64,000 bases of DNA from Podarcis melisellensis (Eukaryota): the NCBI GenBank assembly GCA_964234715.1, contig OZ174287.1. The stretch is one strand, 5' to 3'. Under the pieces are notes generated by a model. It was given only the letters and a program-made list of their open reading frames with translations, had not been told where the DNA came from and searched no databases. Made by a program: the position numbers and the translations under genes. Below, in pieces: positions 15,222-48,075 of the stretch (positions are counted from its first letter, which is position 1; every line of letters starts with the position of its first letter).

Positions 15222-16544
15222 GTGAGTGTGTTCTTTGCATTTCTGTGCATGAAAAAATACAGGGAAGAATCCATCTATAAATGAATGTGATGAGCCCAGG
15301 TCGGTAATGCATTAATGATCAAGGGCACAGGTGTTTTGAATATTTGGCATTTTGATAGTGTGTTCTTTTTTGTTCTGTCCCATGTGAACAGTAGTTGCCC
15401 TTAATAATGCTCACTTCAGTTCAGCAGGAGAGATTTTTAAATGCTCTTGAACCTCTCCCATTGAAATGAATGGGATTAAAAAGCCCCATTTGTTACACAG
15501 GTATGCGCACACAAATTGAAATGATTCTTTTGAATTTAGTCCTATTAATATTAATCCTTCAAAATGGGTAAGATATCAGTACCATAAATTCAAATAAATA
15601 TAAAGCCTAGAAGATTCACAAAGTCCCTGGGAGAGCTGTAATCATGTCTACGAAGTTGACAAAAAGAGCTTGCACGTCATAACCAAATGGTTATTTTTCT
15701 CTTGGCGGCTTTGATTTTCTTAAAAACCATAGAGCAATGTAGCTTAGACTACCCTGGATTCTGGCCCATCCCATTCCATGGAAATTGTGCTTTGGGCTAT
15801 AATGGCCTCTGGTCACCTATTAATTCCAGTGACCATCAAAACACTCCATAGCAACTGTTTCCACAGGTGGTTCATGTGCTGGGAGAGCAAATTGCTTTGC
15901 AGTGTCAAGAGGAGGATGCAAAAGTTTTTTTTAAGAATGGGTTTTTCCTGATACTCTTGCACTGTATGGCACAGCTGTTGATGTTTGCCATGTTCTGTGT
16001 TTCCCCCCCATCTTTTCAAGCTTAAACTCCAGTTGCGTCAGCATTTTTTCACAGGAAGATTATTCATCTCTCAGATCATACTGAGTGGCTTTTCTTATAC
16101 CTTGCAGCCAGCTGTATTTGCTCCTGCAGAAGAGCTCCGATCTAAGTAACATGTTACCCCTATATGAAGGGCCTGGCCATGAACACACTTTGAAAAAAGA
16201 CAAGCAGTTCAGTTAAATATAGGTAGCACTGCAGGTTACAGTATTTGGAAATGGCTCTCATTTCACTACCGCATGGAGCTAGGGTGCCTCCTAGTGGCTC
16301 TGTTGCCATTTCAAATGTGCAGTTATTCGGAAGTGCGGCCTCTGTTTGACCCCCACTAAACTAAGTGGCAAATATTCCTGTGTGGATTACCCGTTGGCCA
16401 TGCTCCCAGAGGCTGAGCAGGTTTGCCAGCGTACCACATGTCAGGTTTCTAATTTAGCTTCACTGACTTGAGCTTGAAGCAGAGAGGGTGATTGCTTGTG
16501 GCAGAGAAAGAGCCTTGTCACTTGCTCTGTTTGATTTCTTTCAG

Positions 16545-16652
16545 CTCCACAAGCAAGCTGATATGCAGGAAGAGAAGAACCGAATAGAACGTGTACTTGG
16601 CGCAATATCTCAGCCGGAGTTAATACAGAAAGTTCTCACTTTTGCACTTTCA
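16545..16652 (+). CDS. NPEPPS: NPEPPS exon ~20: LHKQADMQEEKNRIERVLGAISQPELIQKVLTFALS
   Basis: ctttcag / gtgagt; 108 nt. Confidence 0.96.
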
Positions 16653-16807
16653 GTGAGTAACCAACAAAATGCTCAGTTGTGTGTGTCCCATGCATCGGAA
16701 GTTGCATAAACATGGAATTACCGGGTGCCTGTTTTCGAGATCTTGGGAATCTTGGTTTACATTTTTTTACTTTGATTGCTTCTATCATACACATCAAAAT
16801 CAATGTA

Positions 16808-17281
16808 CAGTGGTACCTTGGTTCTCAAACTTAATCGGTTTCGGAAGTCAATTCCAAAACCAAAGCATTCCAAAACCAAGGCACACTTTCCCATAGAAAG
16901 TAAAGCAAAATGGATTAATCCGTTCCAGACTTTTAAAAACAAACCTCTAAAACAGCAATTTAACATGAATTTTATTATCTAACGAGACCATTGATCCATA
17001 AAATGAAAGCAGTAAACAATGTACTGCAGTCACACAATCAATCAATCAATCAGTAGCTGAACTGGGTTCCACACAGTCACAAAAAAGCTACAAAAACGCA
17101 AAATAAATAGTAAAAACAGACAGACCTCAGCGTAACACTCAAAACGGAAGTGTGGCACTCAAAACGGTGCACACTTGGCTTCCGAAAAAGTTCGCAAACC
17201 CGAACACCTATTTCTGGGTTTACAGTGTTTGGATTCCAAGTTGTTTGAGTACCAAGGCGTTTGAGAACCATGGTACCACTG
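16808..17281. mobile_element. Tc1/mariner (Tigger/pogo-like) MITE
   Basis: TIRs CAGTGGTACCTTGGTTCTCAAAC / GTTTGAGAACCATGGTACCACTG flanked by TA on both sides. Confidence 0.88.
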
Positions 17282-18420
17282 TACTACAAATACATATTGT
17301 ATATTCCTAAATGATTACTGGTATTCTCACAAGACTCAAAATCCTCACGCCACAGCACAATACCTCATTTTTAAAGAAAAGTTAGTTAACGTTGGCTTGG
17401 AACATATATGCCCAGCTTGATGACAAAGAAACCAAAGGGAAATTGAGCAGCAATTGGTACATCACTTGCCCTGCATATCTCCCACAGCCATAAAATTAAT
17501 GCAAAATAAGCTGAAAAGAAAGAGACAGAGGGAGGAGCAATGGCACAAAGCTGCAAGAGGTGTAAAGAGTGCAAAGCAGGTTCAGAGTGGTTGGCCTCTT
17601 TGCCCCTGTATTTTTTCAGAATTGGATCACTCATCAGGCGTATGTCAATATCTTCCTCTGTATGTCTGAGAACTAGCAACTTGTTTGAACTAAAGAAAAT
17701 GTGTGTGGTAGTGGTAGGCTTGCACTAGTAGTTTACTGCGGTTTACTGCTGAGTGTTCCATTGTAGGCCGGTTCACGTGTGGCCACTGATACCTTGGAAG
17801 ATTAATCAGTGGTTGCTGCTGTTTTCCTCTGGGTGCTTGAAAGAGACTGGATTGCCTAGGAGTAGAATCTTCAGTCTGAATGTAGAGAAGTGTGGGATAC
17901 TTGCAGCTTCACAGGCTTAAATGACTGAGAAATAGCAACAATTGCATCTCCTCTGGAATGGCCATGTGGCCATTACAGAATTGAAATATTTACTGCTGAA
18001 ACTGGCTGTGGGAATAGTCCGTTGCTGTTAGAATGCCCCCCTGCTCCACAGTATGGTTGATTAATACACATGGGGCTGCCACCGAAACCAGCCATCCCAT
18101 ACCATTCCCCTTCCTTCTGCTTCTAACATCTAGTTATAGCAGTGAATACAGTGCAGCAGTGAGGCCCAAGAGGCCTGGCTAGTACTGCCATCAACGGAGG
18201 GTGTGTCCTGGAAGACTTCCCAGGATCCTTTGCAACACAGAGAAGCAGGCAAGTGAGTTAAATGAAGCAAGAATATCTGAATGCTGCTTCCCCAGACTAG
18301 TTAAGTAGGCAAGCTGGTGCTGCAGCTGCACGTGATGGCATCTCTTGGATGGTGCGTGGGGAACTTAAATGTGGATTCAAGGCTGCTAGAATTACCTGCA
18401 ATTTCTTACTCCATTTGCAG

Positions 18421-18576
18421 GAAGAGGTACGTCCTCAGGACACAGTATCTGTCATTGGTGGAGTGGCCGGAGGCAGCAAGCAGGGCAGGAAAGCTGCCTG
18501 GAAGTTTGTCAGAGACAACTGGGAGGAACTCTATAATCGCTACCAAGGAGGGTTCTTAATATCCCGGCTAATAAAG
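18421..18576 (+). CDS. NPEPPS: NPEPPS exon ~21: EEVRPQDTVSVIGGVAGG...GGFLISRLIK
   Basis: tttgcag / gtgcgc; 156 nt. Confidence 0.96.
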
Positions 18577-18676
18577 GTGCGCACACAAAAAGTTTTGACT
18601 ACAGTAGTCATTGAAAATACGAGGCTTTAAAAAGTTCCCTCCCCTCCTGATTTATTGTGCATTCCTTGTTTTTCAG

Positions 18677-18724
18677 CTATCGGTGGATGGATTTGCAATT
18701 GACAAAATGGCTGCAGAGGTTAAG
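18677..18724 (+). CDS. NPEPPS: NPEPPS exon ~22: LSVDGFAIDKMAAEVK
   Basis: ttttcag / gtaaga; 48 nt. Confidence 0.95.
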
Positions 18725-19328
18725 GTAAGACAGTCTGATCTGCATCTTGGCTGATGGCATTGCCAGGGCCTGTGCATTTAGAGGCCAATAAAGGGGTGAT
18801 ATGCCTGACCTAATTCCTCTGTGCACACTGTTGGGGCATCCTCATTGTGGGAGGGAGTAGGGGCAAGGACAAATATATGTCAGAGCAAGGTATTCTAGAA
18901 CTCTCTTTCCTGACTTGGCATTCTCCCGATAAATAAAAACAAGTGTGCAAAGAAGCCAATCGATGTGAATTGATTTTGTCTTATGTAAGGGTTGAATGAC
19001 CAAACCCCTAACCAAGGAAATTGCCATGGTTACAGACTCTTGACTTTTTCTTTAAAAACCATCAGTTTTAAGCACGTTACACTATAGGGAGAGTTCTTTC
19101 CCCCAGGGTTGTGCTGCAGAGGGATTAATTGGCTAGCATATCACAATGAAGGGAGCACAGAATAGTTGGGGGTCATAAACCACTGTCACTCAAAGTGTTG
19201 GGACATTTAAGTTGCCTGTTGCACTGTTCTACCGCCCATGGTGGGGGTCACTGAATTATACCAGGGTAAAGCTAGGATTTAACTATAGCTGTCTCAGATA
19301 ACACACAGAAATACTACTACTAGTACTA

Positions 19329-19567
19329 CAACAACAACAACAACAACAACATATTTATACCCAGCCCATTTGGCTGGGTTTCCCCGCCACTTTGGGTGGC
19401 TCCCAATAGAATATTAAAAACACGATAAAACATCAGACATTATAAACTTCCCTAAACAGGGTTGCCGTCAGATGTCTTCTAAAACTCAGATAGTTGTTTA
19501 TTTCCTTGACATCTGATGGGAGGGCGTTCCACAGGGCGGGTGCCACTACCAAGAAGTCCCTCTGCCC
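19329..19567 (-). mobile_element. 3' end of an L2-type LINE with (TTG)n tail
   Basis: (ACA)n run on +, then the typical L2 3' region (gggagggcgttccacagggcggg...); family call by resemblance only. Confidence 0.6.
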
Positions 19568-19871
19568 TAGTCTGAGTCCAAATCAGAGAGAGATTTGGAG
19601 GCAATGGCATTTGGGGTTATTATAGTGATCAAGACCTGGTAAACCTCACTTGGTCTGTGGAAGTGCATATTGAATGTGCTCTACATATTCTTCAGCAGTC
19701 TGCAAGGCCCCGATGAACACTGTTCAAACCTTAGCAAAGATTGATTTTGCTAATTAGTTCTGTGTGAAAACTAGCCCCATACCCACATTTCTATGTAGTT
19801 TGATTGTCCTGAAATGGATGAATATATGCCAGAATATATTTATCGTTTTGCTGTCCTCTATACATCACCTT

Positions 19872-20205
19872 GGGTACTTGAAGGTGGCGCTGTGGTCTAA
19901 ACCACTGAGCCTCTTGCGCTTGCCGATCAGACGGTCGGCCGTTCGAATCCATGCAGCAGGGTGAGCTCCCCTTGCTCTGTCCCAGCTCCTGCCAACCTAG
20001 CAGTTCGAAAGCACACCACTGTAAGTAGATAAATAGGCACCGCTGCGGTGGGAAAGTAGATGGCTTTTCCGTGCGCTCTGGTTTCCGTCAGTGTCCCGTT
20101 GCCCAGGAGCGGTTTAGTCATGCTGGCCACATTACCTGGAATGCTGTCTGTGGACAAATGCCAGCTCCCTTTGCCTGAAAGCGAGATAGTGCTTTACTTT
20201 TTTAC
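19872..20205 (+). mobile_element. Sauria SINE, older and internally deleted
   Basis: Homologous to the copies at 3697 and 9796 (ggtggcgctgtggtctaaacc...gttcgaatcc...gtagataaatagg). Confidence 0.85.
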
Positions 20206-20600
20206 CTGCTTGAATAAGCATAAGGACAATTTATTGTTACAAAAAAACCAAAAAACTATCTATGGCTGTAAACTTAACACCTGCCTTTCTCCCTGGGAGT
20301 ATAGGATATCTTCTCACTGTGGCAACATAGAAAAATCAAGACAATTTAAAGCAGAAACTTGCAAAAGCATTTAGCCGCCTTAATGGTAAACGTGCTCTGG
20401 GTTGCATCCAGGTACACATGCCCAACTGAGCAGTCCCTGTTCTTGTAGTTAGGTTCTGCTTTTTTTGCCCACCTTGTATTTAAAAAAACACACACCCTAA
20501 ACTTTTATTTCCTGTGGAACTGAGACCTCTATCCTAAGATTCAAACTTATTAAAATGACATATATGGAACTCCTAGTGGATGTTGTTTCGTTTTATATAG

Positions 20601-20753
20601 GCTTTCTTTGAGAGTCACCCAGCTCCGTCAGCTGAGCGCACCATCCAGCAGTGCTGTGAAAACATTCTGTTGAACGCTGCATGGCTGAAGCGCGATGCCG
20701 AAAATCTGCACCAGTACCTCCTGCAGCGCAAGGCCTCACCGACTGCTGTGTGA
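20601..20753 (+). CDS. NPEPPS: NPEPPS last exon CDS: AFFESHPAPSAERTIQQCCENILLNAAWLKRDAENLHQYLLQRKASPTAV*
   Basis: tatatag acceptor; TGA at 20751-20753. Confidence 0.97.
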   Translation, partial: AFFESHPAPSAERTIQQCCENILLNAAWLKRDAENLHQYLLQRKASPTAV

Positions 20754-34300: not shown

Positions 34301-37123
34301 CTCATATTGTGTATGAGAGAGGTGAATTGCCATAAGCATTCCATAACCCTGTGTAGTCCAAATGGGAGGTGCATGTGTGACGTGTGGACCGCATGTCTAG
34401 ACTTGCTTCCTGTACCACCCGTGTTCAGGCTAAGGAAGTTCATACTGGGTGGATTGAAGGGCAGGGTATAAGGCAGAGTTTGGCAATATTTTGTGGCCTG
34501 TGGGCATATTTGGAAACAGGAGAAATTCTCATAGGCAACAAACACATGCCACAGCCGAAAACACACAACATCATCTATTGGCTACAACAGAATGCTGCTT
34601 TTGTGCCTAATTTCACTGGGGGGGTGTGTTTACCCTGTGGGTGCCAGCCCATGTGTGTGCACATGTGCAACTGCAGGAACCACATTAGTGACCCTTGATA
34701 CGTGAGATCGTGTAAGAGCATCTTGAGCTGGTGTAGGATGAGGGAAATTGGTTGAAAGATGGAGGACGGATTGGGATTCTACAGGAAAGCTGAGAAAAAT
34801 TCTAACGTTGCTGTTTAGGGACCAGCCGTGGATAGAGTATGGGGGCGGAGAGGCTGAGATATGAATAATGCCCATGGGGATTTGTATTTGTTTTTCCTTT
34901 AAACAGATACCCTCCAAGCTGCATAACAAGTCACTTTTTGAAAGTGAGGAAACTTCCAAAAGCAGTTAGTAATATGTCATGGGTTTGTATGTAATTTCCA
35001 TATAAAGAAAGTAAAAAAATTATAATATGCAGCCCCAATCCCTCAAGCGCTCTGGAATACTGACAAGTCTGTGATTCCTAGACACCAGTACCAAGCTTTC
35101 AGGTGTCAATATACTAAGATTCCTGGATCTTTGTGACCTGGCTATGCTCCTCCATCAAACTGGCCTGAGGATGTGCCTTAAGTAAGCATTGCAGTTTGTG
35201 CCATTGGATGTTCAACCACCCACCCTGTGCTGTCCCACCGTCTGCACATCCAAACTGGGTAAATAAAACTTGACGAATATCCAAACTCTACAACCTACCC
35301 TTTACCATTTGCTGTTTTTCTTTTCATGATTTCTCTTCAGCCATCCATTACTAGTCTGCCAGTGCACTCCAGTGTCACTGAAAATAAAGGGGGATTTAAA
35401 TCTGTCAAGTGCTTTTGAGCAAATTGCAGTTTAACACCCATCCTGGTTTGTTGCTAGAATTTTATAGAGCCATCATAGTTGAATGTTGGCTAAATATTTC
35501 CCAGTTCGTTCATCATATTAACACATGAAGACCTTTGGGTGACAGTTTCCTAATTAGGATATCATGTTCGAACATGCAGAACAACTCCTGTGTCCTTCGC
35601 CAAATTGACTGCTTTAAAAACCACTGCTAGCTACTTCTAGGATTTAGTTTGAAGTCACATTTCTTTTACAGCAGGGCAGTCAGCACTGAGATGTCTGGAA
35701 AAGCCCATGAGTCAAAAAGGACACAATTGGTAGTAACTTTGTGTACTTGCATAGGGTGGAAATGCTATTGATACTCAGTGTAGCTGCACTGAAGATAGTT
35801 AGCATGACTAATATTAGTTTCAGTAGGTCTATCTTGAATAGGACCTGGTTGGATACCACACATTCATTTGCCTACCGTAAAGATCATGTGCAAAACAACA
35901 GTTGATGGATATGATGTAATTACCTTCTTCTTCTGTTGGTATTATTATTAATGCCTTAATTATACTGACTTGAGGGTATAAATTTTGACTCTGTATCATG
36001 AGTATTAAGAAGTAATTGTGGATTTGCTTAGTTGCTATCTACTATGCAGACCCAGGGGTGGGGAACTTCCTGCCTAGGTCTGTCAGGCCTCCCCATTTGT
36101 TCTGCAAGGCTGTTATGGCCAAGCCACACCCATTTGCTCTGAATCGGTGTGGGGCAGGTAAAGATGTAGCTGGACTGGAAGGTGGAGTGCAAGCACTGAC
36201 CATCTGCTGATTGGTGACACCTGCAATACCTGAGCACACTGCTTTGCAGGCTCATCGGAACTTGGAAAGCACAGTGCTTTTGCCAGCATGGTTTAAATTC
36301 ACATTGCACGGGCAAAAAGAGGTCACCTGACTGCATTGTGACTTCAGGTGATGGATAGCTCCAGTTCCCCATCCCTGATGTAAACGGCTTATGCCCACCT
36401 TCTCCTGCAACCCTGTTACAATCCTGTTGTACAACCTTGTAGGAAATTCTGCATATTTGGGTTGAGTTTTAGTAGTCTAGTCCTAAAAGAATCTGCTTAG
36501 CAACTCAAGGAGAGAACTGGAATTGGGATGGTTCTGCCATATAGCAGAATGTAGCAACTTGTTTCAGGTAGTATCAAGAAGTGGAATAGACAGCAGTGTC
36601 TGAATGCTGCAACAAGCCGCCTTAAAATGTTGGCCCTACTAGGGTGGAGTGAAATGAGGATTGTTCCATTTTGGCTCAATGGTCATACATACTATCTCAG
36701 CAATGGTGAAATCAGAAAATAAATTTCCATGCAATAGAGTATGACACTTGAGAGATATATTCAAATACAGTATGAGCTTGAGCATGGAATCATTGACTGA
36801 CTTTCAGCAGGTTGCTGTGTGTCAGTTCTTAATCTATAAGGTAGGAGTAACCAGAGGTTGCTTGCACTATTCGTTTCACAGTTATATAAATCACTACTAA
36901 GAAGGACTAAACATGTATTATATTACATATTGAGGTGTGTATGTACTTTCAGCTTGGGAAAGGTAAGATTCTTCCATTCTGGTTTTTGACCCTTAAATTC
37001 AACTGTAAATGCTATCTCATTCATGCAAAGGTTAGAGATGAGGCGTAACTATTGCTTCACTCAAGGAAAGATGCAAGCTAGCTTCAGTTACTGAATTGTA
37101 TTTACCTCTCTTTTTTTGGCCAG

Positions 37124-37306
37124 CCCACTTTCCTTGTGGAACTGTCCAGAGTGCTGGCAAACCCAGGGAACAGCCAGGTTGCCAGAGTTGCAGCTGGTTT
37201 GCAGATCAAGAACTCTCTGACATCTAAAGACCCTGATGTTAAGGCCCAGCACCAGCAGAGATGGCTTGCAATCGATGCCAATGCTCGTCGAGAAGTCAAG
37301 AATTAT
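37124..37306 (+). CDS. KPNB1: KPNB1 exon 3: [22 protein letters not shown]...ARREVKNY
   Basis: tggccag / gtacgt; 183 nt. Confidence 0.97.
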
Positions 37307-37592
37307 GTACGTAAAAATTACAGCATTTTTGCTTTTCTTCCCAGTTGTGTTTGTTCAACCACCCTGTTATTCTATAGTGAATGCAGATCATGCATCTACA
37401 TCTGTGTTTTGAGACCTTGCTTCTCAGTTTACTTTTCTCTTGTTTATTTCAAGTCAAAGAATCTGTTTGGTCTCTGGCGTGTGAGATTGTTTTCTCAGCT
37501 TAAAGAGATTTCTTACGGTGACCTCTGGGATCCTATAATAAAATTGAAAGTCCCATGCCCAGAAGTTCTGTGTGATCTAGTAATATAGCTGA

Positions 37593-37883
<291 letters not shown>

Positions 37884-38216
37884 TGAGTCTGCTGTGCTAA
37901 AATCTGCTGCTTTCCCCCCCTGCACCTGCTCCTGCTCTGCTCCTCTGCTCTTTAGTGGCTTAATTTGAATCTGAACTGCCACTCGGTGGGCTCATCCCCC
38001 AAATCAGTTATGTTGTGTGTCTGCCACTTTGTCACACCAAGGTAAAAACTAATCTGTTGAACGTGGTATCTGTGTTCTACAATTTCATGAAGGAAAGCTC
38101 TTACAGAAAGTGTGTGTAGATGTGAATGTGTGCCAACAGAGGGAAGACTGCTGTGGGGGGTGGGGTTCTCATTTCTTTTTTTCTTCTTCACTTCCATCAC
38201 CACCATGCCTACTGCT

Positions 38217-38463
38217 AGAGCCAGTGTGGTGTAGTGGTTAAGAGTGGTAGTCTTGTAATCTGGGGAACCGGGTTCACGTCTCCGCTCTTCCACATGCAGC
38301 TGCTGGGTGACTTGGGCCAGTCACACTTCTTTGAAGTCTCTCAGCCCCACTCACCTCACAGAGTGTTTGTTGTGGGGGAGGAAGGGAAAGGAGAATGTTA
38401 GCCGCTTTGAGACTCCTGAAGGGGAGTGAAAGGCGGGATATCAAATCCAAACTCTTCTCTTCT
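38217..38463 (+). mobile_element. tRNA/CORE SINE with L2-like tail (Squam3-like)
   Basis: A box tggtgtagtgg, B-box-like ggttcacgtctcc, CORE-like tgggtgacttgggccagtca, tail ...atcaaatccaaactcttctcttct. Confidence 0.85.
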
Positions 38464-38811
38464 GTTGCACTGGTCCTCTTGCCACAAATTTCTTCTTGTT
38501 CCTTTTCCTCTGCTGCGCCACTGTTCTTCAAGGAAAAAATGCTCTGTTCTGGGAACCTAAATGTTTGAGGACTTTCGCTTGTGTTCCCTACAAGATCAGG
38601 CATGCTGCTGACCCAAAGTAACTAGATGCATTTGTTATGGAGAAAGAGGCATGCATATATTCTGTACTTGCATGGAACATCTGTCCCTGTAGGTTAGAAG
38701 TCGTAAGTGAATTGGGTGCTTAGCTGTTCTGCGAGATACCTCCATGCTGGTTGTGATCTGGCAAAGAATCTCCTCTTGACATTTTTTGCTTATTTTGATT
38801 CCTGTTTTTAG

Positions 38812-39018
<207 letters not shown>

Positions 39019-39036
39019 TAATGGGACATGAGAAAT

Positions 39037-39114
39037 AAATCCATGGTCCGTGATGAGAAACCATGCACCACTCTGAGTTTTGATGCATTCCCATTTCTGC
39101 TGAGACTTGGATTT
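39037..39114 (+). ncRNA. Intronic box C/D snoRNA, copy A (KPNB1 intron 5); predicted guide for 18S rRNA Gm1328-equivalent methylation
   Basis: C box GTGATGA 39050-39056; guide CCATGCACCAC 39061-39071; D' CTGA 39073-39076; C' TTGATGC 39080-39086; D CTGA 39100-39103; terminal stem aaatcca..ggtc / gact..tggattt. Confidence 0.85.
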
Positions 39115-40450
39115 ATGTGTTAGCAGCCAGTTATGAGAAGCATAATCCTATTGCAGTGGTGAAGAGTGAATACTAAATCAACTAAAATTGTAACTCTCAA
39201 ATAATCCTGTGAATTTTAACTGATATGCACTCTAGGAGGCACTCTAGGAACTCTGTAAAAGAGTTTTGCAGCTTGTAAGCTAGCACCTCCTTCCATGCCC
39301 TTGATGGAGATCACTTCAGTACATAGGGAGCAAAGCAGTCTCTTGGGTATGCAGGGCCTGCAATTTGCTTCCTAAGCAGTCTGTGCTCTGAAGCCTAGTT
39401 TGTGTGTTCTTCTCCATCTTGGGGTGTGATACTGCCTGTGGGTGAATTCCTTTGTCTGAATTTGCTTCATAACTATTTCTCAGGCATTGCCAGTGTATTT
39501 CAGGCAAGAGCTATGTTTTAGCATTTTTGGAAAAGTAGTGCAGACCAGCTTATCAGTCAGTACAGGCAATGTCATCCCTGTCCTGAGCCTTTGGAAACCA
39601 TTAAAGCTGTCTCTGGAATGGTGATTGCAGGGGCTAGGTTTTAGGGTTTCCCCCCTTTTAATTGGTTGAGGCATGGAAGGAAGCTCTCAGGTAGCCTAAA
39701 TGCAGATCTGTAATCCTTGCCTCTTCAATGTAGAGGCTTTCGGAAAGAACGAGAGAACCTCTCCGTATGGGTACAAATCATTTATTTCAGTTTTCTACAC
39801 CTGAGGAATAATTGCTGAAGTAATCTTCCTTACCTTTTGGTATCTAACTTTACCAGAAAACGTAAAGATTAAGAATTAAACTACTTAATTAGCCGCTTAA
39901 AAAATAGAAATAACTGCAGTGTTCTAGGAAGACAATTGGGGTTTTTTAAATCTTGCAGAGTCAGTTGGTACTTAGTAGTCTAACCCTTTTCTATTTTGTG
40001 AAAATGAGAAGTCCTGTTTTTAACAAGTCTTAGTTTTAAAAAACTTATTTCTAGCCTATTATATTAAAAAACTCAAATAATTACTGGGAAAAGAAACCAG
40101 AATGACCAAATGTCGGAGGCTACCTTTTCACGTGGAAAGCAGAGTGATGAAACCCTGATTTGCTTTATATCCTGCAGTTTTTTAATCTGGTCCTTGACTT
40201 AAATGAACACAAGTCAAAACATATTTGATCATGATACCCTCAGCTTTCTTTTTGTATAAGCATATTGCGTATAGGTGACAATAGTGGCTGACCTGTTTGT
40301 CAAAGCTGTCGTTAGGAAGAGGCAATAATTTATGCCCTAAGCATGCAAGAGTTTGAGCCTTTTCTGACCATTGTCCATGCTTCACTGCTGGGTTGCCCAT
40401 ATATTGTGAACCACAGCTGGCAAGAAAAACTGAAATTGTCAGTGTTGTAG

Positions 40451-40618
<168 letters not shown>

Positions 40619-41130
40619 TAAGTCCTAAACTGTTGTCAATAGTAACTGATAGTAGTTCTGGTCAGTGTTCAAAACTCCCACTGCTCTAGGTGCATTTTGC
40701 GACAGGGAATTTCATTAGCATGAGCAGTTTCTGAGCTATGGGCGCAGTACCACGCCTAAGATTTCAGATTAACACTGCAGAGTGGAAGGAAAAGAGGACC
40801 TTTTTCTGCCTGCCCACTTTCAGCTACTCTCTGAAGACTGGAGAAGAGACCCTCTTAAGAATATTAGGGGGGTGGGCAGGGGTAGGACTAGATCATGTGA
40901 AAAATGAACATAATATTTTAGCTGCCGTTCATTCATTTTCAACTTTGTATTCTTGTTATAAAAAAGCATGCCTAGACACTCTGTTGTTGCCCCTATAACC
41001 TAGGTTTAAGGTGCCATTTAGCTCCTAGCTTTCATATCTCAGTTTCTAGCCCTGGTCCTGCTATTATGGAACTAGTCAGAGCATACTTTTTTCTCCAAAA
41101 CGAGCATGAGAAATGTCTTTAAATAATCCT

Positions 41131-41344
41131 AGTTACAGATAGGTAGCCGTGTTGGTCTGCCATAGTCAAAACAAAAAAAATTCCTTCCAGTAGCACCTTA
41201 AAGACCAACTAAGTTAGTTCTTGGTATGAGCTTTCGTGTGCATGCACACTTTGGTATCTGAAGAAGTGTGCATGCACACGAAAGCTCATACCAAGAACTA
41301 ACTTAGTTGGTCTTTAAGGTGCTACTGGAAGGAATTTTTTTTGT
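41131..41344. mobile_element. Penelope-like element terminal fragment forming a fold-back (inverted) structure
   Basis: 13-bp TSD tttaaataatcct (41118-41130 and 41345-41357); perfect 84-bp inverted repeat; embedded minimal hammerhead motif typical of PLE pseudo-LTRs. Confidence 0.8.
41251..41294 (+). ncRNA. Minimal type I hammerhead ribozyme motif (PLE-type)
   Basis: Stem I TTGGTAT/ATACCAA; core CTGAAGA plus an extra A; stem II GTGTG-CATG-CACAC; GAAA-gc-TC with predicted cleavage after C41287. Confidence 0.75.
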
Positions 41345-42482
41345 TTTAAATAATCCTGTTTTTAATTGTCCTTTAATCAAGATAATCAATATATGTGGTG
41401 CTTTAGAGTTGTGTACACAAAACAAAAGGCATGTATCTGTCCCCAAGGAACTTGTAATCTAAATTGACAGTGGCGCAGACAACCGAAGGATGGGGAAAGA
41501 CATCTGGGTAGGCAAAGTGTTAATGTGAGCAAATCCCATTGTGCACCCTTAAGATAGGTTGCAGTTGGAGATGCGGGTTAAAAGGCTTGGAGAGATTTGA
41601 GGAGGGGCTTGATGTGGTCTGAGCAATGGGAGAAACGAATGATATCAGCAGTGGCGTTTTGGGTAGAGGTGGGAGGGTTGATGCAGGCAGGTCAGAGAAA
41701 AGGAATGTAAAGGCAGGAGATGGCCAGAGCATAGACCACAGTTTTAGCCGAGGGGACTTCAAGAGGTGACATTTTTGCCATTCATCAGCAAGAAGCAATA
41801 CGATTTAGCAACATAATTGAACAATTGGGGAGAGGAACACAAATGAGTTAAGTATAATGCTAGGGATGCAAAGCTTTGTTTCGGTTGCAAGCAAACATGA
41901 TCTACACCTGCAGAGGTGATGCTTGCCAGTTGCTATCAAAGGTCTGTCTAGCCCATCATTCTGTTTCCAGCTGTGACAGCCAGATGCTGCTCAGAAGCTG
42001 GTAAGTAGGTGGAATAGCAGTGCTGCTATTTTGGCAGTGGCAGGTAATCCGGATCATGCTTCCATTTTCAGCTCTGGCAGCTAATAAGTCATTGGTTCAT
42101 ACCTCTTGTGAGTTGCGGTGTTGGGTTTTGCAGTTGGATCTCTCCTGAGTATATGTGGCTGCCTCATTACCACGATTGGCTGTCTGCTGGGAATGGGTCT
42201 GATTGTGAACCTTTGTCTATTCTCGTAACTTCAGTTATGGTGATTGTCCTAACAGACTGCGGATACGGAGGTCATGTGGCCCCATAATTATGCAGGCTGC
42301 AACCCTGCTGGTTCCAAGAGGCCACTGGAGGGGATGTGCTGCATTGAGCACTAGCACAAGACTCCTTGCCTTTGGGGAAAGCTTTTTGGTGCTTTGTCTG
42401 CAGCATTATTATGAAATATAAGGTGAATACATCTGATAATTCACCATAGGAACAAAATAAGCTATACTTGATCAAGTCATCT

Positions 42483-42757
42483 TTATATATATCTATAATA
42501 TTTATTAAGTTTTCATTTTACAATATTTAAACATCTTCATTTTCACATTATTTTTGCTCATATGAGCTAGTTGACTTCTGCCTCTCCAGTCTCATGGTTA
42601 CTTTAATTTTTATTTTGTCATTTTATTTTATTTTGTACTTCTTCCTGATTACGTTTCATCATTTCTGATTTACAATTTTTTAAAGAATATGTAAAAAGGT
42701 ATAATTTTCACCATTACAAGTCTTATTCAGTCAGTCCTGCTAGCATTCTTAATTGTT
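42483..42757 (-). mobile_element. AT-rich retroposed insert, probably a truncated LINE (L1) 3'UTR
   Basis: Flanked by a perfect 18-bp direct repeat tacttgatcaagtcatct (42465-42482 / 42758-42775); T-rich left end. Confidence 0.65.
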
Positions 42758-43652
42758 TACTTGATCAAGTCATCTATCTTTAAGGCAGCTTCCAACAGGT
42801 CGCACACATAGGTTATCAAGTGGTTGTTACATGGTAGCTTCCTTCCTGCCAAACGGTGAATTCTGCAGCTGGTTGGAAGTCTGGAGGAGGAAATTGGGAG
42901 TCATCAATTTCTCCTTGCCGCTTGGCAGGATCACTAGCTTACCAAGAGATTCAATGCATCAAATCCTCAACGCGTTAAATTGTTGCTTGGCAAATGATTG
43001 TACTTATTTGTCCATAACCGAGTATGATTCACACGGGCATTTTGAAGCGATGCCCTGAGGCAATGTTCTTCCCCGGTGTTGTGACAAAGCAGTCTTGTGG
43101 GAAATCGTCCTGGGTTGTGACAAAGTAATCGTGTCTTGAAAAATGGTAGAAAACGAGCATTTAAAGAGCTTGGCTGTGTAGGCATTCCATAAGAATGGGT
43201 GCTTTAGAGTAAGGCAGGTTGCCTTTCTTCCAAGCCTTTTCAGAATGCTGTGAGAAGAACCCTGGCAAAATGGCAAAGCTTGTGGCATTGCTGCTTTTAA
43301 TGCACTGCAGTGATACTATGGTCGACTTCAATGGTTATTTTTCATAGCTAGGAAGGCTCACGTTTTCATTACTATGACACTTATTAAAAATACCATAGGA
43401 AGGCTATTTCTCTGGTACAATGTGCAAAATGCTTTACATTCCTCCTTTTGTTCCAGTCTCCCAGTAGTTTTCCCCCCCATTTAGAATTGGGAAGCAGACC
43501 ATGAATTGCTGCTTGGTCAACCAATGCAGTATTAACTGCAGATTTTTGGGGGATCCATGTTCCACTGCTTTAACTGGTGCAACAATAAGCTTTTTTTGCT
43601 TCCACAAAGCATCCATGGAGGTAATGGGTCCTGTCTTTTTATTTGCCTTTAG

Positions 43653-43742
43653 GTGCGAGTAGCTGCCTTACAGAACTTGGTGAAGATTATGTCCCTCTAT
43701 TATCAGTACATGGAGACGTATATGGGTCCTGCACTTTTTGCT
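43653..43742 (+). CDS. KPNB1: KPNB1 exon 7: [30 protein letters not shown]
   Basis: cctttag / gtgagt; 90 nt. Confidence 0.97.
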
Positions 43743-43825
43743 GTGAGTATTCAAGCCTGGGAATCAAGAACGGAAGTGTAGGTACTTACTGTAGGTGCGT
43801 TGCTTTAGTAAAGCAGCAACAGTGA

Positions 43826-44120
<295 letters not shown>

Positions 44121-45133
44121 CTTTCCTAAGAGCAGGAGGTGCTATTAGCTTTGAAGGAGACAGGGCTTACCATATGTCCTGCTTAAGAGGATATTGCTGG
44201 ACCCAAAAATAAAGATAACCATTTGTAGTGCAGTGTTATACCTTAAAGTACAAGCAATAAGTGATCTACAAGTGTCCAATTGATACGTCATGGCGCATTG
44301 CAGCAACCCGGAAAGGGGGGCAAGGGGGGCTTATGTTTGCCCCGCCAAAGTGCCCAAGAATGAAGAATGTTACCCCTGCACAGATTGGTTGCCGCCTGCA
44401 AATATAAACAGAACAATACTTGCAGGGGGAAGGAGGTTTGGGGGAAGAGGGAGGGGGTAGGCTTTGGTAGTGCCTACTAGGAATATACTGCATGCAAATA
44501 TTTCAAGGTGCAGATCCAGATTTCTGGGTGCTTGGTATCTTTGTGTCACCTGCTGAAGACTGCTTTTTTGTATGCTGCAAGAGTAAATAAGTCCTCTGAC
44601 CCCTGAGCATTTTGGAGATGGGGGCACCTATTCCTTCCAGTGTAGATCACACTTTTAGCCACCAAGAGGATACACAAAGTCCTATTACATTGCCCCACCA
44701 TCAAGATCCGTAGCACTGGAATATAATTGAATGTAATGTGAGCATCTTGAGATTTTTAGTGATTTTCCTAGGATCACGTTAACACGGACAATGACGTCTG
44801 GCCAGAATAGGCTCACTTATAGGGCAAGACCAGATCATACATTTCCTTCCAAACTACAAGCAGCAACCAAGATTTGGTTTTGACTTAACACTTGTTCAGT
44901 GAAAATGATAAGCCCATGTCCAGATAACATGGCAACCCAGACTCTGGCTTGTTTTGTTTGTGAGGTGGATGTGAGCAGGTTTTCTTAGTTTTAAACAATG
45001 GTTTAATATGATATGTGAACTGGGCTTAGGTGATCTTCAGAGAGCCCAGGTGGCATTTAAAGTTTCAATTAAGCAAGCCAATTTCAGATGGATGATTGAA
45101 ACTAATGGAAATGTGCATGGGTTTTGTTTTTAG

Positions 45134-45271
<138 letters not shown>

Positions 45272-45971
45272 TAGTGTGGTTAAGGGCCTGTGGCAGCAGT
45301 TCTTGTAAGTTTGAAGGAACAGCGTTGGAATATATCCTGCTCCCCTGAAAATAATAGTGTGGTCTTAACAAAATAATGTTCCCCATTCTACAGAGGACTG
45401 CCTTTTCCTATGACTTGCTATTGTACAAGGTCTCTGAAATAGCCATGGCAGTCTTTGGTCTGTGGTGAGATTGCATTCACTCTACTCATCAGCAATGTCT
45501 CACCCCCTCTACTTGTTGCCATATAGAGGCTCAGAACTCTTGAGTGCTCTCCACTCCATCCAATAGGAGGCAGTCTCTTTGAATGAACACTCTGCTCAGA
45601 GCTGGACCAGGAGGTGTCTTGCGCTTCTCGAAAACTTTTTATTTCTAGCAAACACATAAGTAATACTTCAGTTTTGTTGACCTGAAGCTGTCCCTTAGTA
45701 TATGCTACTCTTTTATATTAAGCTGTTACATCTGAGTTTTTAATTAAAAACTACAACATGGGAGATTCAGGAGCATTGTGTATAGGCAATGGGTCTTTTC
45801 GGTTCAAATTAAGCTTCTTCGTAATATTAAAAATATTACTTGCACTGTATAGAGCAGTTATCACAAGAGTGCTCTGTTTATAAAGTAGCTTTCCAGTTTC
45901 TACTGGGAAAGTAGTCAACATTGCTTCATGTGTGTGGTAACCAACATTTCTTTTGCTTTGTGAAATTGACT

Positions 45972-46220
45972 CAGCCATACCTTGGAAGTCGAACAGAATC
46001 CGTTCCAGAAGTCTGTTCGACTTCCAAACATTCGGAAACCCAAGCATGGCTTCTGATTGGCTGCAGGAAGCTCCTGCAGCCAATAAGGAGCCGCAGAAGC
46101 CCCGTTGGACATTTGGGTTTCACAGAACGTTTGCAAAACAGAACACTCACTTTAGGGTTTGCAGTGTTCAGGAGCCAAAATGTCCGAATACCAAGACGTT
46201 TGGGAGCCAAGGTACGACTG
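45972..46220. mobile_element. Tc1/mariner-type MITE (same family as the element at 25195)
   Basis: CAGCCATACCTTGG ... CCAAGGTACGACTG followed by TA; shared internal palindrome. Confidence 0.8.
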
Positions 46221-46323
46221 TAGTTTGCTTTGGCCTGGATTCTACCTACTAGTTTCAAAAATGTCATGCCTTGCTTACGTAGTCCAACAGAGATTGACTT
46301 GGGTGTTGTCCCTTTCACCTTAG

Positions 46324-46638
<315 letters not shown>

Positions 46639-47348
46639 TAGATTTGACTAGAAAACATCTCACAGCACTCTGTGAAGTAGGATATACATAGGGGCCATAT
46701 GTGGTCCTTGGTCACTGGTAAAAATGTGGTGTGTTTTTTTTTTAAAAAAAAAACATTTTATTACAATGAAACAATAATCTTACAAATGCATTCTGAAATA
46801 ACCCATAAAAGACCAAATCATAGCAATATAAACCAAACACATTTGTCAGAGGTGGCATAATAAAAAAAGAATCAGCATAACAATTCAATAGACCTTGGTT
46901 CTTGTATATGAGACGTCAACAAACAACAAACAAGACATCAACAAACAGCAAGACAATTTGCTTCAGATTCCCTTTAATTACCAGATTACAAAAGTCAAAG
47001 GCCCTGAGGAACATGAATAAGCTACACATTGTGTGCATTTCTGTGTAGATCATGAGTTATGTCTGACAGTAGGAAATACTGTATGGACTTTATTTTTGGT
47101 AGAAAAGGTGGTAATGTTTTTTGCCCTGAGACTGTAGAAATGAGGGAATAGTACACTGGTGTGTCACCGGCCAGAGGGACAAGAGCCACAGGGGAGTTTT
47201 ATATCCCTCCCCAAAAAGAATACCATGGCAAGATGACCTATTGGCCAGAGAAGAACAGCTTGTTCCCTTACCACCGCAAGATCAGAAAGAATGTCCCTTC
47301 ACCAACTATCTAAAAGCCATTATATAAATATAAAATAAAGAGTATTGA

Positions 47349-48075
<727 letters not shown>

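What the first reader, a model, noticed from the sequence alone, without database searches (positions are those of the whole stretch)
39037..39114. Second, paralogous C/D snoRNA in KPNB1 intron 5 with an identical D' guide but a diverged D-side
Seen: GGTCC-RTGATGAGA-A-CCATGCACCACTCTGA is shared almost exactly with the intron-8 copy, as are TGATGC and GCTGAGAC. The segment between C' and D has diverged completely (attcccatttctg vs gacgacctataacg). Inference: conserved boxes and guide with a free spacer is the signature of purifying selection on two functional copies from an old intragenic duplication. Only the D' guide appears to be the shared active one.
Basis: partly seen in the sequence, partly recalled or inferred. 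Interest (0 to 1): 0.72.

Follow-up and report, generated by a model that had tools for sequence, protein, structure and literature searches.

The report
Known KPNB1-intron C/D snoRNA twin
This is a real-looking small nucleolar RNA gene in intron 5 of the importin beta-1 gene, the twin of one in intron 8; both are predicted to direct one conserved methylation of 18S ribosomal RNA, and the same pair was described in chicken in 2009, so it is ordinary.

Summary
Copy A (39037-114, +) has every box C/D part. It shares 30 of 32 bases with copy B in intron 8, namely the 5' stem half, C box, guide and D' box. The C'-to-D spacers and the flanks are unrelated.

The 12-nt guide CCAUGCACCACU is the antisense element that Shao et al. 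2009 (PMC2653536) print for chicken GGgCD25a. Chicken has two isoforms in KPNB1 introns "4,7". They target 18S G1286, the site of human U32A/B, yeast snR40 and plant snoR21, and are marked present in lizard and absent in mammals and frog. By its flanks, copy A is the orthologue of chicken GGgCD25b and copy B of GGgCD25a, so the duplication is old.

A third sauropsid-like KPNB1 locus (metagenome contigs L006/L007) keeps an intact intron-5 copy with one compensatory change in the outer stem. Its intron-8 copy has lost its boxes, so the twins look redundant. The D-side is not conserved among orthologues, so this is a single guide.

Expression could not be tested, because only contigs were on hand. 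This scan already followed up the twin (s1-501569) on this same window and reached the same conclusion.

The parts
39037..39043 (+). 5' half of the external (precursor) stem, AAAUCCA
   Evidence: It pairs with UGGAUUU at 39108-14 in the MFE fold. The outermost A-U pair is G-C in the L007 orthologue, a compensatory change.
39045..39048 (+). 5' half of the terminal stem, GGUC
   Evidence: It pairs with GACU at 39104-07. The same GGUC is found in copy B and in L007.
39050..39056 (+). C box, GUGAUGA
   Evidence: It is aligned to the C box of RF00300, RF00533 and RF01201.
39060..39072 (+). D' guide ACCAUGCACCACU. Twelve of its bases (CCAUGCACCACU) are complementary to 18S GGUGGUGCAUGG. C39068 is the fifth base upstream of D' and faces the G to be methylated.
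   Evidence: It is identical to the antisense element printed for chicken GGgCD25a, target 18S-G1286. The same guide sits in the Rfam consensus of plant snoR21b and fly snoMe18S-Gm1358.
39073..39076 (+). D' box, CUGA
39081..39086 (+). C' box, UGAUGC
   Evidence: It is identical in copy B, in L007 and in both chicken isoforms.
39087..39099 (+). C'-to-D spacer AUUCCCAUUUCUG. The length is kept but the sequence is free, and no conserved D guide is present.
   Evidence: Identity is 4/17 to copy B and 8/16 to the L007 orthologue. The chicken spacer differs. Its reverse complement has no other + strand match in the window.
39100..39103 (+). D box, CUGA
39104..39114 (+). 3' halves of the terminal stem (GACU) and the external stem (UGGAUUU)
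   Evidence: Fold. Identity to L007 is 10/11. The same GACTTGGATT is present in chicken GGgCD25b.
38812..38964 (+). KPNB1 coding exon 5 (...[11 protein letters not shown]). Intron 5 runs from 38965 to 40552.
   Evidence: Frame translations. The exon peptide is 98% identical in L006/L007.
44049..44120 (+). Paralogue copy B in intron 8, with external stem UUCGGUC/GACCGAA, the same guide and spacer GACGACCUAUAACG
   Evidence: It is the orthologue of chicken GGgCD25a.

Best explanation
Copy A is an intron-encoded box C/D small nucleolar RNA of about 63 nt (39045-39107). It is the orthologue of chicken GGgCD25b and the paralogue of the intron-8 copy, which corresponds to GGgCD25a. After transcription within the KPNB1 pre-mRNA, the C and D boxes are brought together by the GGUC/GACU terminal stem, which the 7-bp external stem lengthens. 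The core proteins (15.5K/SNU13, NOP56, NOP58, fibrillarin) then assemble, and exonucleases trim the intron to the mature ends. The 12-nt element upstream of the D' box pairs with 18S rRNA GGUGGUGCAUGG. This places the G opposite the fifth guide base (chicken G1286, human G1328, yeast G1271) for 2'-O-methylation by fibrillarin. The C'-to-D segment serves only as a spacer of the needed length, so the RNA is a single guide and is functionally redundant with copy B. What is shown: the anatomy, the paralogy, the orthology, the conservation pattern and the complementarity to the rRNA string printed in the paper. What is inferred: expression, snoRNP assembly, the methylation itself and the helper role of the external stem. 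The last of these rests on the gene's position, 80 nt from the 5' splice site and about 1445 nt from the 3' splice site. That is far from the roughly 70-nt distance upstream of the 3' splice site that favours splicing-coupled assembly in mammalian cells (my own knowledge of Hirose and Steitz's work, not checked here).
For: All box C/D parts are at canonical spacings. The stems are predicted in the MFE fold (-21.5 kcal/mol, z -2.0). The guide is identical to that of chicken GGgCD25a, and the paper's table gives 18S-G1286, a 12-nt 5' element, homologues snR40/snR21/U32A/B and host KPNB1 introns 4,7. The flanks and loop match chicken GGgCD25b (compared by eye). The paper marks both isoforms present in lizard and absent in human, mouse, opossum, platypus and frog. 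An independent KPNB1 locus (L006/L007, exon peptides 98-100% identical) has an intact intron-5 copy, and this is the only alignable part of that intron. It also shows a compensatory A-U to G-C change in the outer stem. Four of the sub-threshold Rfam matches, including the two best (plant snoR21b at 28.4 bits with E 1e-4, fly snoMe18S-Gm1358, yeast snR40 and plant snoR120), align the same guide in front of the D' box (the rest, such as SCARNA18, snoR117 and SNORD27, look like generic C/D matches). Yeast snR40 has been shown to use its D' guide for Gm1271 (PMC4344503). A contig from a close relative (X19) covers 38975-39642 with 8 differences, none of them listed inside 39037-39114.
Against: There is no expression evidence. 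No listed run is on record as RNA, and the 'RNA?' runs gave low-depth pieces spread along the intron, as skim DNA would. The chicken paper predicted GGgCD25 by computation, and I found no statement that it was among the five guide C/D snoRNAs checked by RT-PCR. No Rfam family reaches its gathering score. The close relatives are too similar (about 1% divergence) for their intact copy to prove selection. The 18S sequence of this species was not on hand, so the target is taken from the chicken paper.
Confidence: 0.85

Rival explanations
1. Copy A is a redundant copy that is silent or decaying. It still looks intact, but copy B does all the work.
For: The twins carry the same guide, so one is dispensable. 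In the L007 species one twin has indeed decayed. No expression data exist for copy A.
Against: The twin that decayed in L007 is the intron-8 one, and the intron-5 copy is the one kept there. Copy A's boxes, guide and both stems are conserved to chicken and to L007 while the rest of intron 5 is unalignable. The outer stem shows a compensatory change.
Confidence: 0.07
2. Copy A is a double guide. Its D-side (AUUCCCAUUUCUG) directs a second, copy-specific methylation, or gives extra base-pairing on rRNA, snRNA or mRNA.
For: The spacer has the length a D guide needs (13 nt). The cmscan alignments place its CCCAUUU beside the D-side of yeast snR40 (ACCCAAAUUU, the 25S-Um898 guide) and of plant snoR21b (UACCCAUU) (PMC4344503).
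Against: The D-side is not conserved among the three intron-5 orthologues: window AUUCCCAUUUCUG, chicken AUAACCCCAUGUCAU, L007 AUAAUUAUUUUGGAA. The chicken paper lists a single 5' guide. A shared 6-mer is near chance level. No complementary site exists on the + strand of the host-gene window.
Confidence: 0.06
3. It is a chance resemblance or a recent neutral duplicate with no function.
For: None found.
Against: Chance expectation is 0.02 for the shared 16-mer and 0.32 for the box skeleton. The flanks of A and B are unrelated. Each copy has its own orthologue in chicken.
Confidence: 0.01

Closest known systems
Chicken GGgCD25b (Shao et al. 2009, PMC2653536), in KPNB1 'intron 4'
   Same: It has the same host gene and relative intron (three introns upstream of the twin). 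It also has the same C box, D' box, GUUUUGAUGCAU loop with C' box, D box, GGUC/GAC stem and AAAUCCA/UGGAUU external stem, and the same 18S target.
   Different: The chicken guide is AUCAUGCACCACG (an 11-nt duplex), while the window has ACCAUGCACCACU (12 nt, as in GGgCD25a). The C'-to-D spacer differs (AUAACCCCAUGUCAU against AUUCCCAUUUCUG). Intron numbering is 4 against 5, which I did not resolve; the three-intron spacing between the twins is the same.
Copy B of this window (44049-44120), orthologue of chicken GGgCD25a, in KPNB1 intron 8
   Same: It has an identical 13-nt guide, the same boxes, the same GGUC terminal stem and a position near the 5' splice site.
   Different: The D'-to-C' loop, the C'-to-D spacer, the external stem (UUCGGUC/GACCGAA) and all flanks are unrelated.
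Human SNORD32A/B (U32A/B)
   Same: It is named in the chicken paper as the mammalian functional homologue for the same 18S site, human G1328. It is called the homologue of snR40 in PMC4344503.
   Different: U32A/B are double guides that also target a 28S site, and they are not found at the KPNB1 locus, since mammals are marked '-' there. No Rfam U32-type model matched the window. In chicken the two functions are split between GGgCD25 and GGgCD35.
Yeast snR40 (RF01201), plant snoZ221/snoR21b (RF00300) and Drosophila snoMe18S-Gm1358 (RF00533)
   Same: They carry the same guide core, UGCACCA, in front of a D' box CUGA, for the equivalent 18S G. For snR40 the use of the D' guide has been shown by mutation.
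   Different: Scores are far below gathering (15.7/50, 28.4/44 and 21.4/50). snR40 also guides 18S Gm562 and, with its D guide, 25S Um898. These genes are not hosted in KPNB1 introns.

Membership tests
Box C/D snoRNA (class) | C box RUGAUGA near the 5' end and D box CUGA near the 3' end, joined by a short terminal stem | tested here: met
   GUGAUGA at 39050-56, CUGA at 39100-03 and GGUC/GACU with a 7-bp outer stem.
Box C/D snoRNA (class) | Internal D' and C' boxes with spacings that allow a guide of 10 nt or more | tested here: met
   D' is CUGA at 39073-76 and C' is UGAUGC at 39081-86. There are 16 nt from C to D' and 13 nt from C' to D.
Box C/D snoRNA (class) | Antisense element next to D or D' that pairs with a known methylated site, with the target opposite the fifth base | tested here: met
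   CCAUGCACCACU pairs with the rRNA string GGUGGUGCAUGG printed in the paper's supplement for 18S-G1286, and the fifth base C39068 faces the fifth G. This species' own 18S was not on hand.
Box C/D snoRNA (class) | A stable, processed ~60-90-nt RNA bound by fibrillarin, NOP56, NOP58 and 15.5K | not testable with these tools
   Only contigs could be laid, and no RNA run was on record.
GGgCD25 pair of sauropsid KPNB1 | Sense-strand location in two KPNB1 introns three introns apart | tested here: met
   The exon map places A after the exon ending ...FDKE and B after the exon ending ...AIEASE. The paper gives introns 4 and 7.
GGgCD25 pair of sauropsid KPNB1 | Sequence orthology to the published chicken isoforms, flanks included | tested here: met
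   I compared the window by eye with the sequences printed. Copy A shares the flanks AAATCCATGGTC and GACTTGGATT and the loop GTTTTGATGCAT with GGgCD25b. The chicken sequences were not typed into an aligner, because they have no reference. The L007 orthologue was aligned by tool.
Rfam RF00300 snoZ221_snoR21b, RF01201 snR40 and RF00533 snoMe18S-Gm1358 | Score at or above the family's gathering threshold | tested here: not met
   Scores were 28.4 against 44, 15.7 against 50 and 21.4 against 50. Copy A works like these families but is not a member by Rfam's criterion.

The most novel reading that the evidence does not exclude
The D-side of copy A (UCCCAUUUCUG before the D box) is a relic, or a still-used helper element, of the second guide of a double-guide ancestor of the snR40 type (yeast ACCCAAAUUU-CUGA for 25S Um898; plant snoR21b UACCCAUU). 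On this reading the sauropsid KPNB1 snoRNAs descend from that ancestral double guide, and the two copies are not fully equivalent.
Probability: 0.12. Interest if true: 0.3.

Novelty: already known. Interest (0 to 1): 0.15.

Why it matters
It matters little beyond annotation. The finding places a correct, functionally assigned snoRNA gene in an intron of KPNB1 in this genome and confirms that the sauropsid GGgCD25a/b pair is an old duplication. A small addition is the third KPNB1 locus, where the intron-8 twin has lost its boxes while the intron-5 twin is intact. That is a concrete case of redundancy being resolved by the loss of one copy. It also suggests that the intron-5 copy, the one examined here, is not the expendable one.

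Tried and rejected
- **Rfam at gathering thresholds:** no match in the window, so no curated family covers this RNA.
- **Expression:** The look-up of sequencing runs (intron-only stretch 38975-40540, to stay clear of the human-like exons) returned no run on record as RNA. Read laying gave contigs only. The two 'RNA?' runs (X1, X2) gave low-depth pieces scattered over the intron, which I read as skim DNA and not as transcription.
- **Sister species:** the X19 contig is about 99% identical across the intron, too close to tell selection from lack of time. The X17 contig that was laid turned out to be copy B cross-matching the shared 32 nt.
- **Cis targets of the two D-sides:** their reverse complements match nowhere else on the + strand of the window.
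- **Tool alignment with the chicken sequences:** left out, because they exist only as text in a supplement and have no reference. I compared them by eye.
- **Metagenome loci L001-L005:** they carry the same C box and guide but no KPNB1 exons, so they were not used as orthologues.
- **Chance or recent neutral duplicate:** rejected.

Full report
**Observation**

One search shows a complete box C/D layout on the + strand:
- outer stem half AAATCCA, 39037-43
- bulged T, 39044
- GGTC, 39045-48
- C box GTGATGA, 39050-56
- guide ACCATGCACCACT, 39060-72
- D' box CTGA, 39073-76
- C' box TGATGC, 39081-86
- spacer ATTCCCATTTCTG, 39087-99
- D box CTGA, 39100-03
- GACT, 39104-07
- TGGATTT, 39108-14

The second copy lies at 44049-44120. 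The shared 16-mer CCATGCACCACTCTGA occurs exactly twice in the window, against 0.02 expected. A blastn of intron 5 against intron 8 aligns only 39045-39076 with 44052-44083 (30/32, E 1.6e-9), and no flank similarity is found. The skeleton TGATGA-N12-22-CTGA-N18-40-CTGA matches only these two places, against 0.32 expected. The C'-to-D spacers share 4 of 17 aligned columns.

**Host gene**

Frame translations give these importin beta-1 exons:
- exon 1: MELITILEKTVSP, near 29.7 kb
- exon 2: near 31.3 kb
- exon 3: about 37120-37300
- exon 4: about 37680-37870
- exon 5: 38812-38964 (...FDKE)
- exon 6: 40553-40612
- exon 7: about 43653-43745
- exon 8: about 43893-44005 (...AIEASE)
- exon 9: from 45134

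Copy A is therefore in intron 5 (38965-40552), 80 nt from the 5' splice site and about 1445 nt from the 3' splice site. Copy B is in intron 8, 46 nt from the 5' splice site.

**Structure**

Both copies fold with the C and D boxes brought together. Copy A folds at -21.5 kcal/mol (z -2.0) with a 9-bp outer stem plus GGUC/GACU. Copy B folds at -17.1 kcal/mol (z -1.5) with UUCGGUC/GACCGAA. The outer stems of the two copies are unrelated in sequence, but both exist.

**What it is**

No Rfam family reaches its gathering score. With permissive thresholds, copy A aligns its guide in front of a D' box in four families, including the two best hits:
- plant snoZ221/snoR21b: 28.4 bits, E 1e-4
- Drosophila snoMe18S-Gm1358: 21.4 bits
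- yeast snR40: 15.7 bits
- plant snoR120: 18.3 bits

The rest of the list (SCARNA18, snoR117, SNORD27 and others) looks like generic C/D matches.

A paper search for KPNB1 and snoRNA led to Shao et al. 2009 (PMC2653536). Its Table 1 lists GGgCD25 with two isoforms, target 18S-G1286, a 12-nt 5' antisense element, homologues snR40, snR21 and U32A/B, and host KPNB1 introns 4,7. Its supplement prints the duplex, rRNA GGUGGUGCAUGG against 3'-UCACCACGUACC-5' next to D', and both gene sequences.

The window's 12-nt element CCAUGCACCACU is identical to that of GGgCD25a. The fifth base upstream of D', C39068, faces the fifth G of the rRNA string.

By eye, copy A shares with GGgCD25b ('intron 4') the flanks AAATCCATGGTC and GACTTGGATT and the loop GTTTTGATGCAT. 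Copy B shares GACACCATGCACCACTCTGA and GTGATGC with GGgCD25a ('intron 7'). I did not type the chicken sequences into an aligner, because they have no reference.

The paper's comparative table marks both isoforms '+' in chicken and lizard, and '-' in human, mouse, opossum, platypus and frog. The duplication therefore predates the split between this animal and chicken, and the pair is published.

**Independent orthologues**

A scan of metagenome contigs for the C box plus guide gave seven loci. L006 and L007 are 99.8% alike. They carry KPNB1 exons 4-8, with peptides 98-100% identical to the window's, and are presumably host DNA of another sauropsid-like animal.

Their intron 5 holds an intact A-type copy. 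Against the window:
- the D', C' and D boxes are 100% identical, and the C box heptamer GTGATGA is also identical (the 6/7 printed comes from a segment set one base too far 5')
- the guide is 15/17
- the 3' stem is 10/11
- the spacer is 8/16

The outermost stem pair changes from A-U to G-C, a compensatory change. Apart from exon 5 and the snoRNA, nothing in intron 5 aligns between the two species. This is the pattern expected under purifying selection on the snoRNA alone.

In the same locus the intron-8 copy has decayed. Its C box reads GTGGTGG, its guide ACACCGAGCACCACT, its D' box is lost and its D box reads CGGA. The two copies are thus redundant enough for one to be lost, and the copy kept there is the intron-5 one.

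**The D-side**

The three intron-5 orthologues differ here:
- window: AUUCCCAUUUCUG
- chicken: AUAACCCCAUGUCAU
- L007: AUAAUUAUUUUGGAA

There is no conserved block in register with the D box. The reverse complements of the two window spacers have no other + strand match in the window. This supports a single-guide RNA, as the chicken paper also lists.

One loose end remains. cmscan lines up copy A's CCCAUUU with the D-side of snR40 (ACCCAAAUUU, the 25S-Um898 guide; targets per PMC4344503) and of plant snoR21b (UACCCAUU). This may be a relic of an ancestral second guide or a 6-mer coincidence.

**Expression and sister species**

I sent only intronic sequence (38975-40540) to the read tools, to stay clear of the exons, which are likely human-like. 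No listed run is on record as RNA. All four laid runs were contigs.
- The 'RNA?' runs X1 and X2 gave low-depth pieces spread over the intron. This looks like skim DNA and says nothing about transcription.
- A relative's contig (X19) spans 38975-39642 with 8 differences, none of them listed within 39037-39114. At about 1% divergence this is uninformative.
- Loose ends show copy B in two relatives, one of them with a single change just after the C' box.

The chicken paper's RT-PCR covered five guide C/D snoRNAs, and I found no statement that GGgCD25 was among them. Expression of copy A therefore remains untested.

**Mechanism**

The most likely mechanism is the standard one for an intron-encoded C/D snoRNA:
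1. A k-turn forms from the C and D boxes, held by the terminal stem.
2. The core proteins assemble.
3. Exonucleases trim the intron to the mature ends.
4. The D' guide pairs with 18S helix-34-region sequence.
5. Fibrillarin methylates the G opposite the fifth guide base.

For yeast snR40, use of the D' guide for Gm1271 has been shown by mutation. The position near the 5' splice site, far from the 3' splice site, together with the long external stems, suggests assembly helped by the stem rather than by splicing-coupled positioning. That last point is inference from my own knowledge of work on mammalian snoRNA processing and was not checked here.

**Comparison and verdict**

Copy A works like U32A/B, snR40 and snoR21 at the same 18S site. 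It is a member of the published GGgCD25 pair by host, position, guide and flanks. It is not a member of the Rfam plant, yeast or fly families by their thresholds.

The earlier follow-up of the twin in this scan (s1-501569) reached the same conclusion. I checked its claim against the paper and its supplements myself.

Interest is low.

Noticed in passing
L007:4396-4488 (also the end of L006): In another sauropsid-like KPNB1 locus the intron-8 snoRNA (the GGgCD25a type) has decayed. The C box is GTGGTGG, the guide has two changes, D' is lost and the D box is CGGA. Most of the box changes are A/T to G/C, in a G+C-rich stretch. The intron-5 copy of the same locus is intact.
   Followed up: partly
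L001, L003, L004, L005 (MDSQ/MDSP contigs) and L002: These are C/D snoRNA-like units with the same C box, guide and D' box as the bird-type intron-5 copy, but without KPNB1 exons. The units and 110-544 nt around them are 88-92% alike between contigs, as for a repeated or retroposed snoRNA. L003 also carries phage terminase-like and portal-like ORFs, so the assembly is probably chimeric.
   Followed up: partly
window 41184-41331: This is a near-perfect 148-nt palindrome in KPNB1 intron 6. It gives sub-threshold matches to several hairpin miRNA families on both strands (mir-559 at 61 bits against a gathering score of 95). Another note of this scan reads a hammerhead ribozyme at 41251-41294. The permissive Rfam scan of 36000-48000 listed no hammerhead family at E up to 10.
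   Followed up: no
window 39087-39099: Copy A's D-side CCCAUUU lines up with the D-side of yeast snR40 (the 25S-Um898 guide) and of plant snoR21b in the cmscan alignments. It may be a relic of an ancestral second guide or a coincidence.
   Followed up: partly
window about 16467-20750 (+): Open frames upstream of KPNB1 read like the 3' exons of an M1-family aminopeptidase (for example ...FVRDNWEELYNRYQGGFLISRLIK and a C-terminal ...NAAWLKRDAENLHQYLLQRKASPTAV). From memory this would fit NPEPPS, the neighbour of KPNB1 in other vertebrates. I did not test it.
   Followed up: no
window about 43830-43890: A (CT)n microsatellite lies directly upstream of KPNB1 exon 8, within the polypyrimidine region of intron 7.
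   Followed up: no
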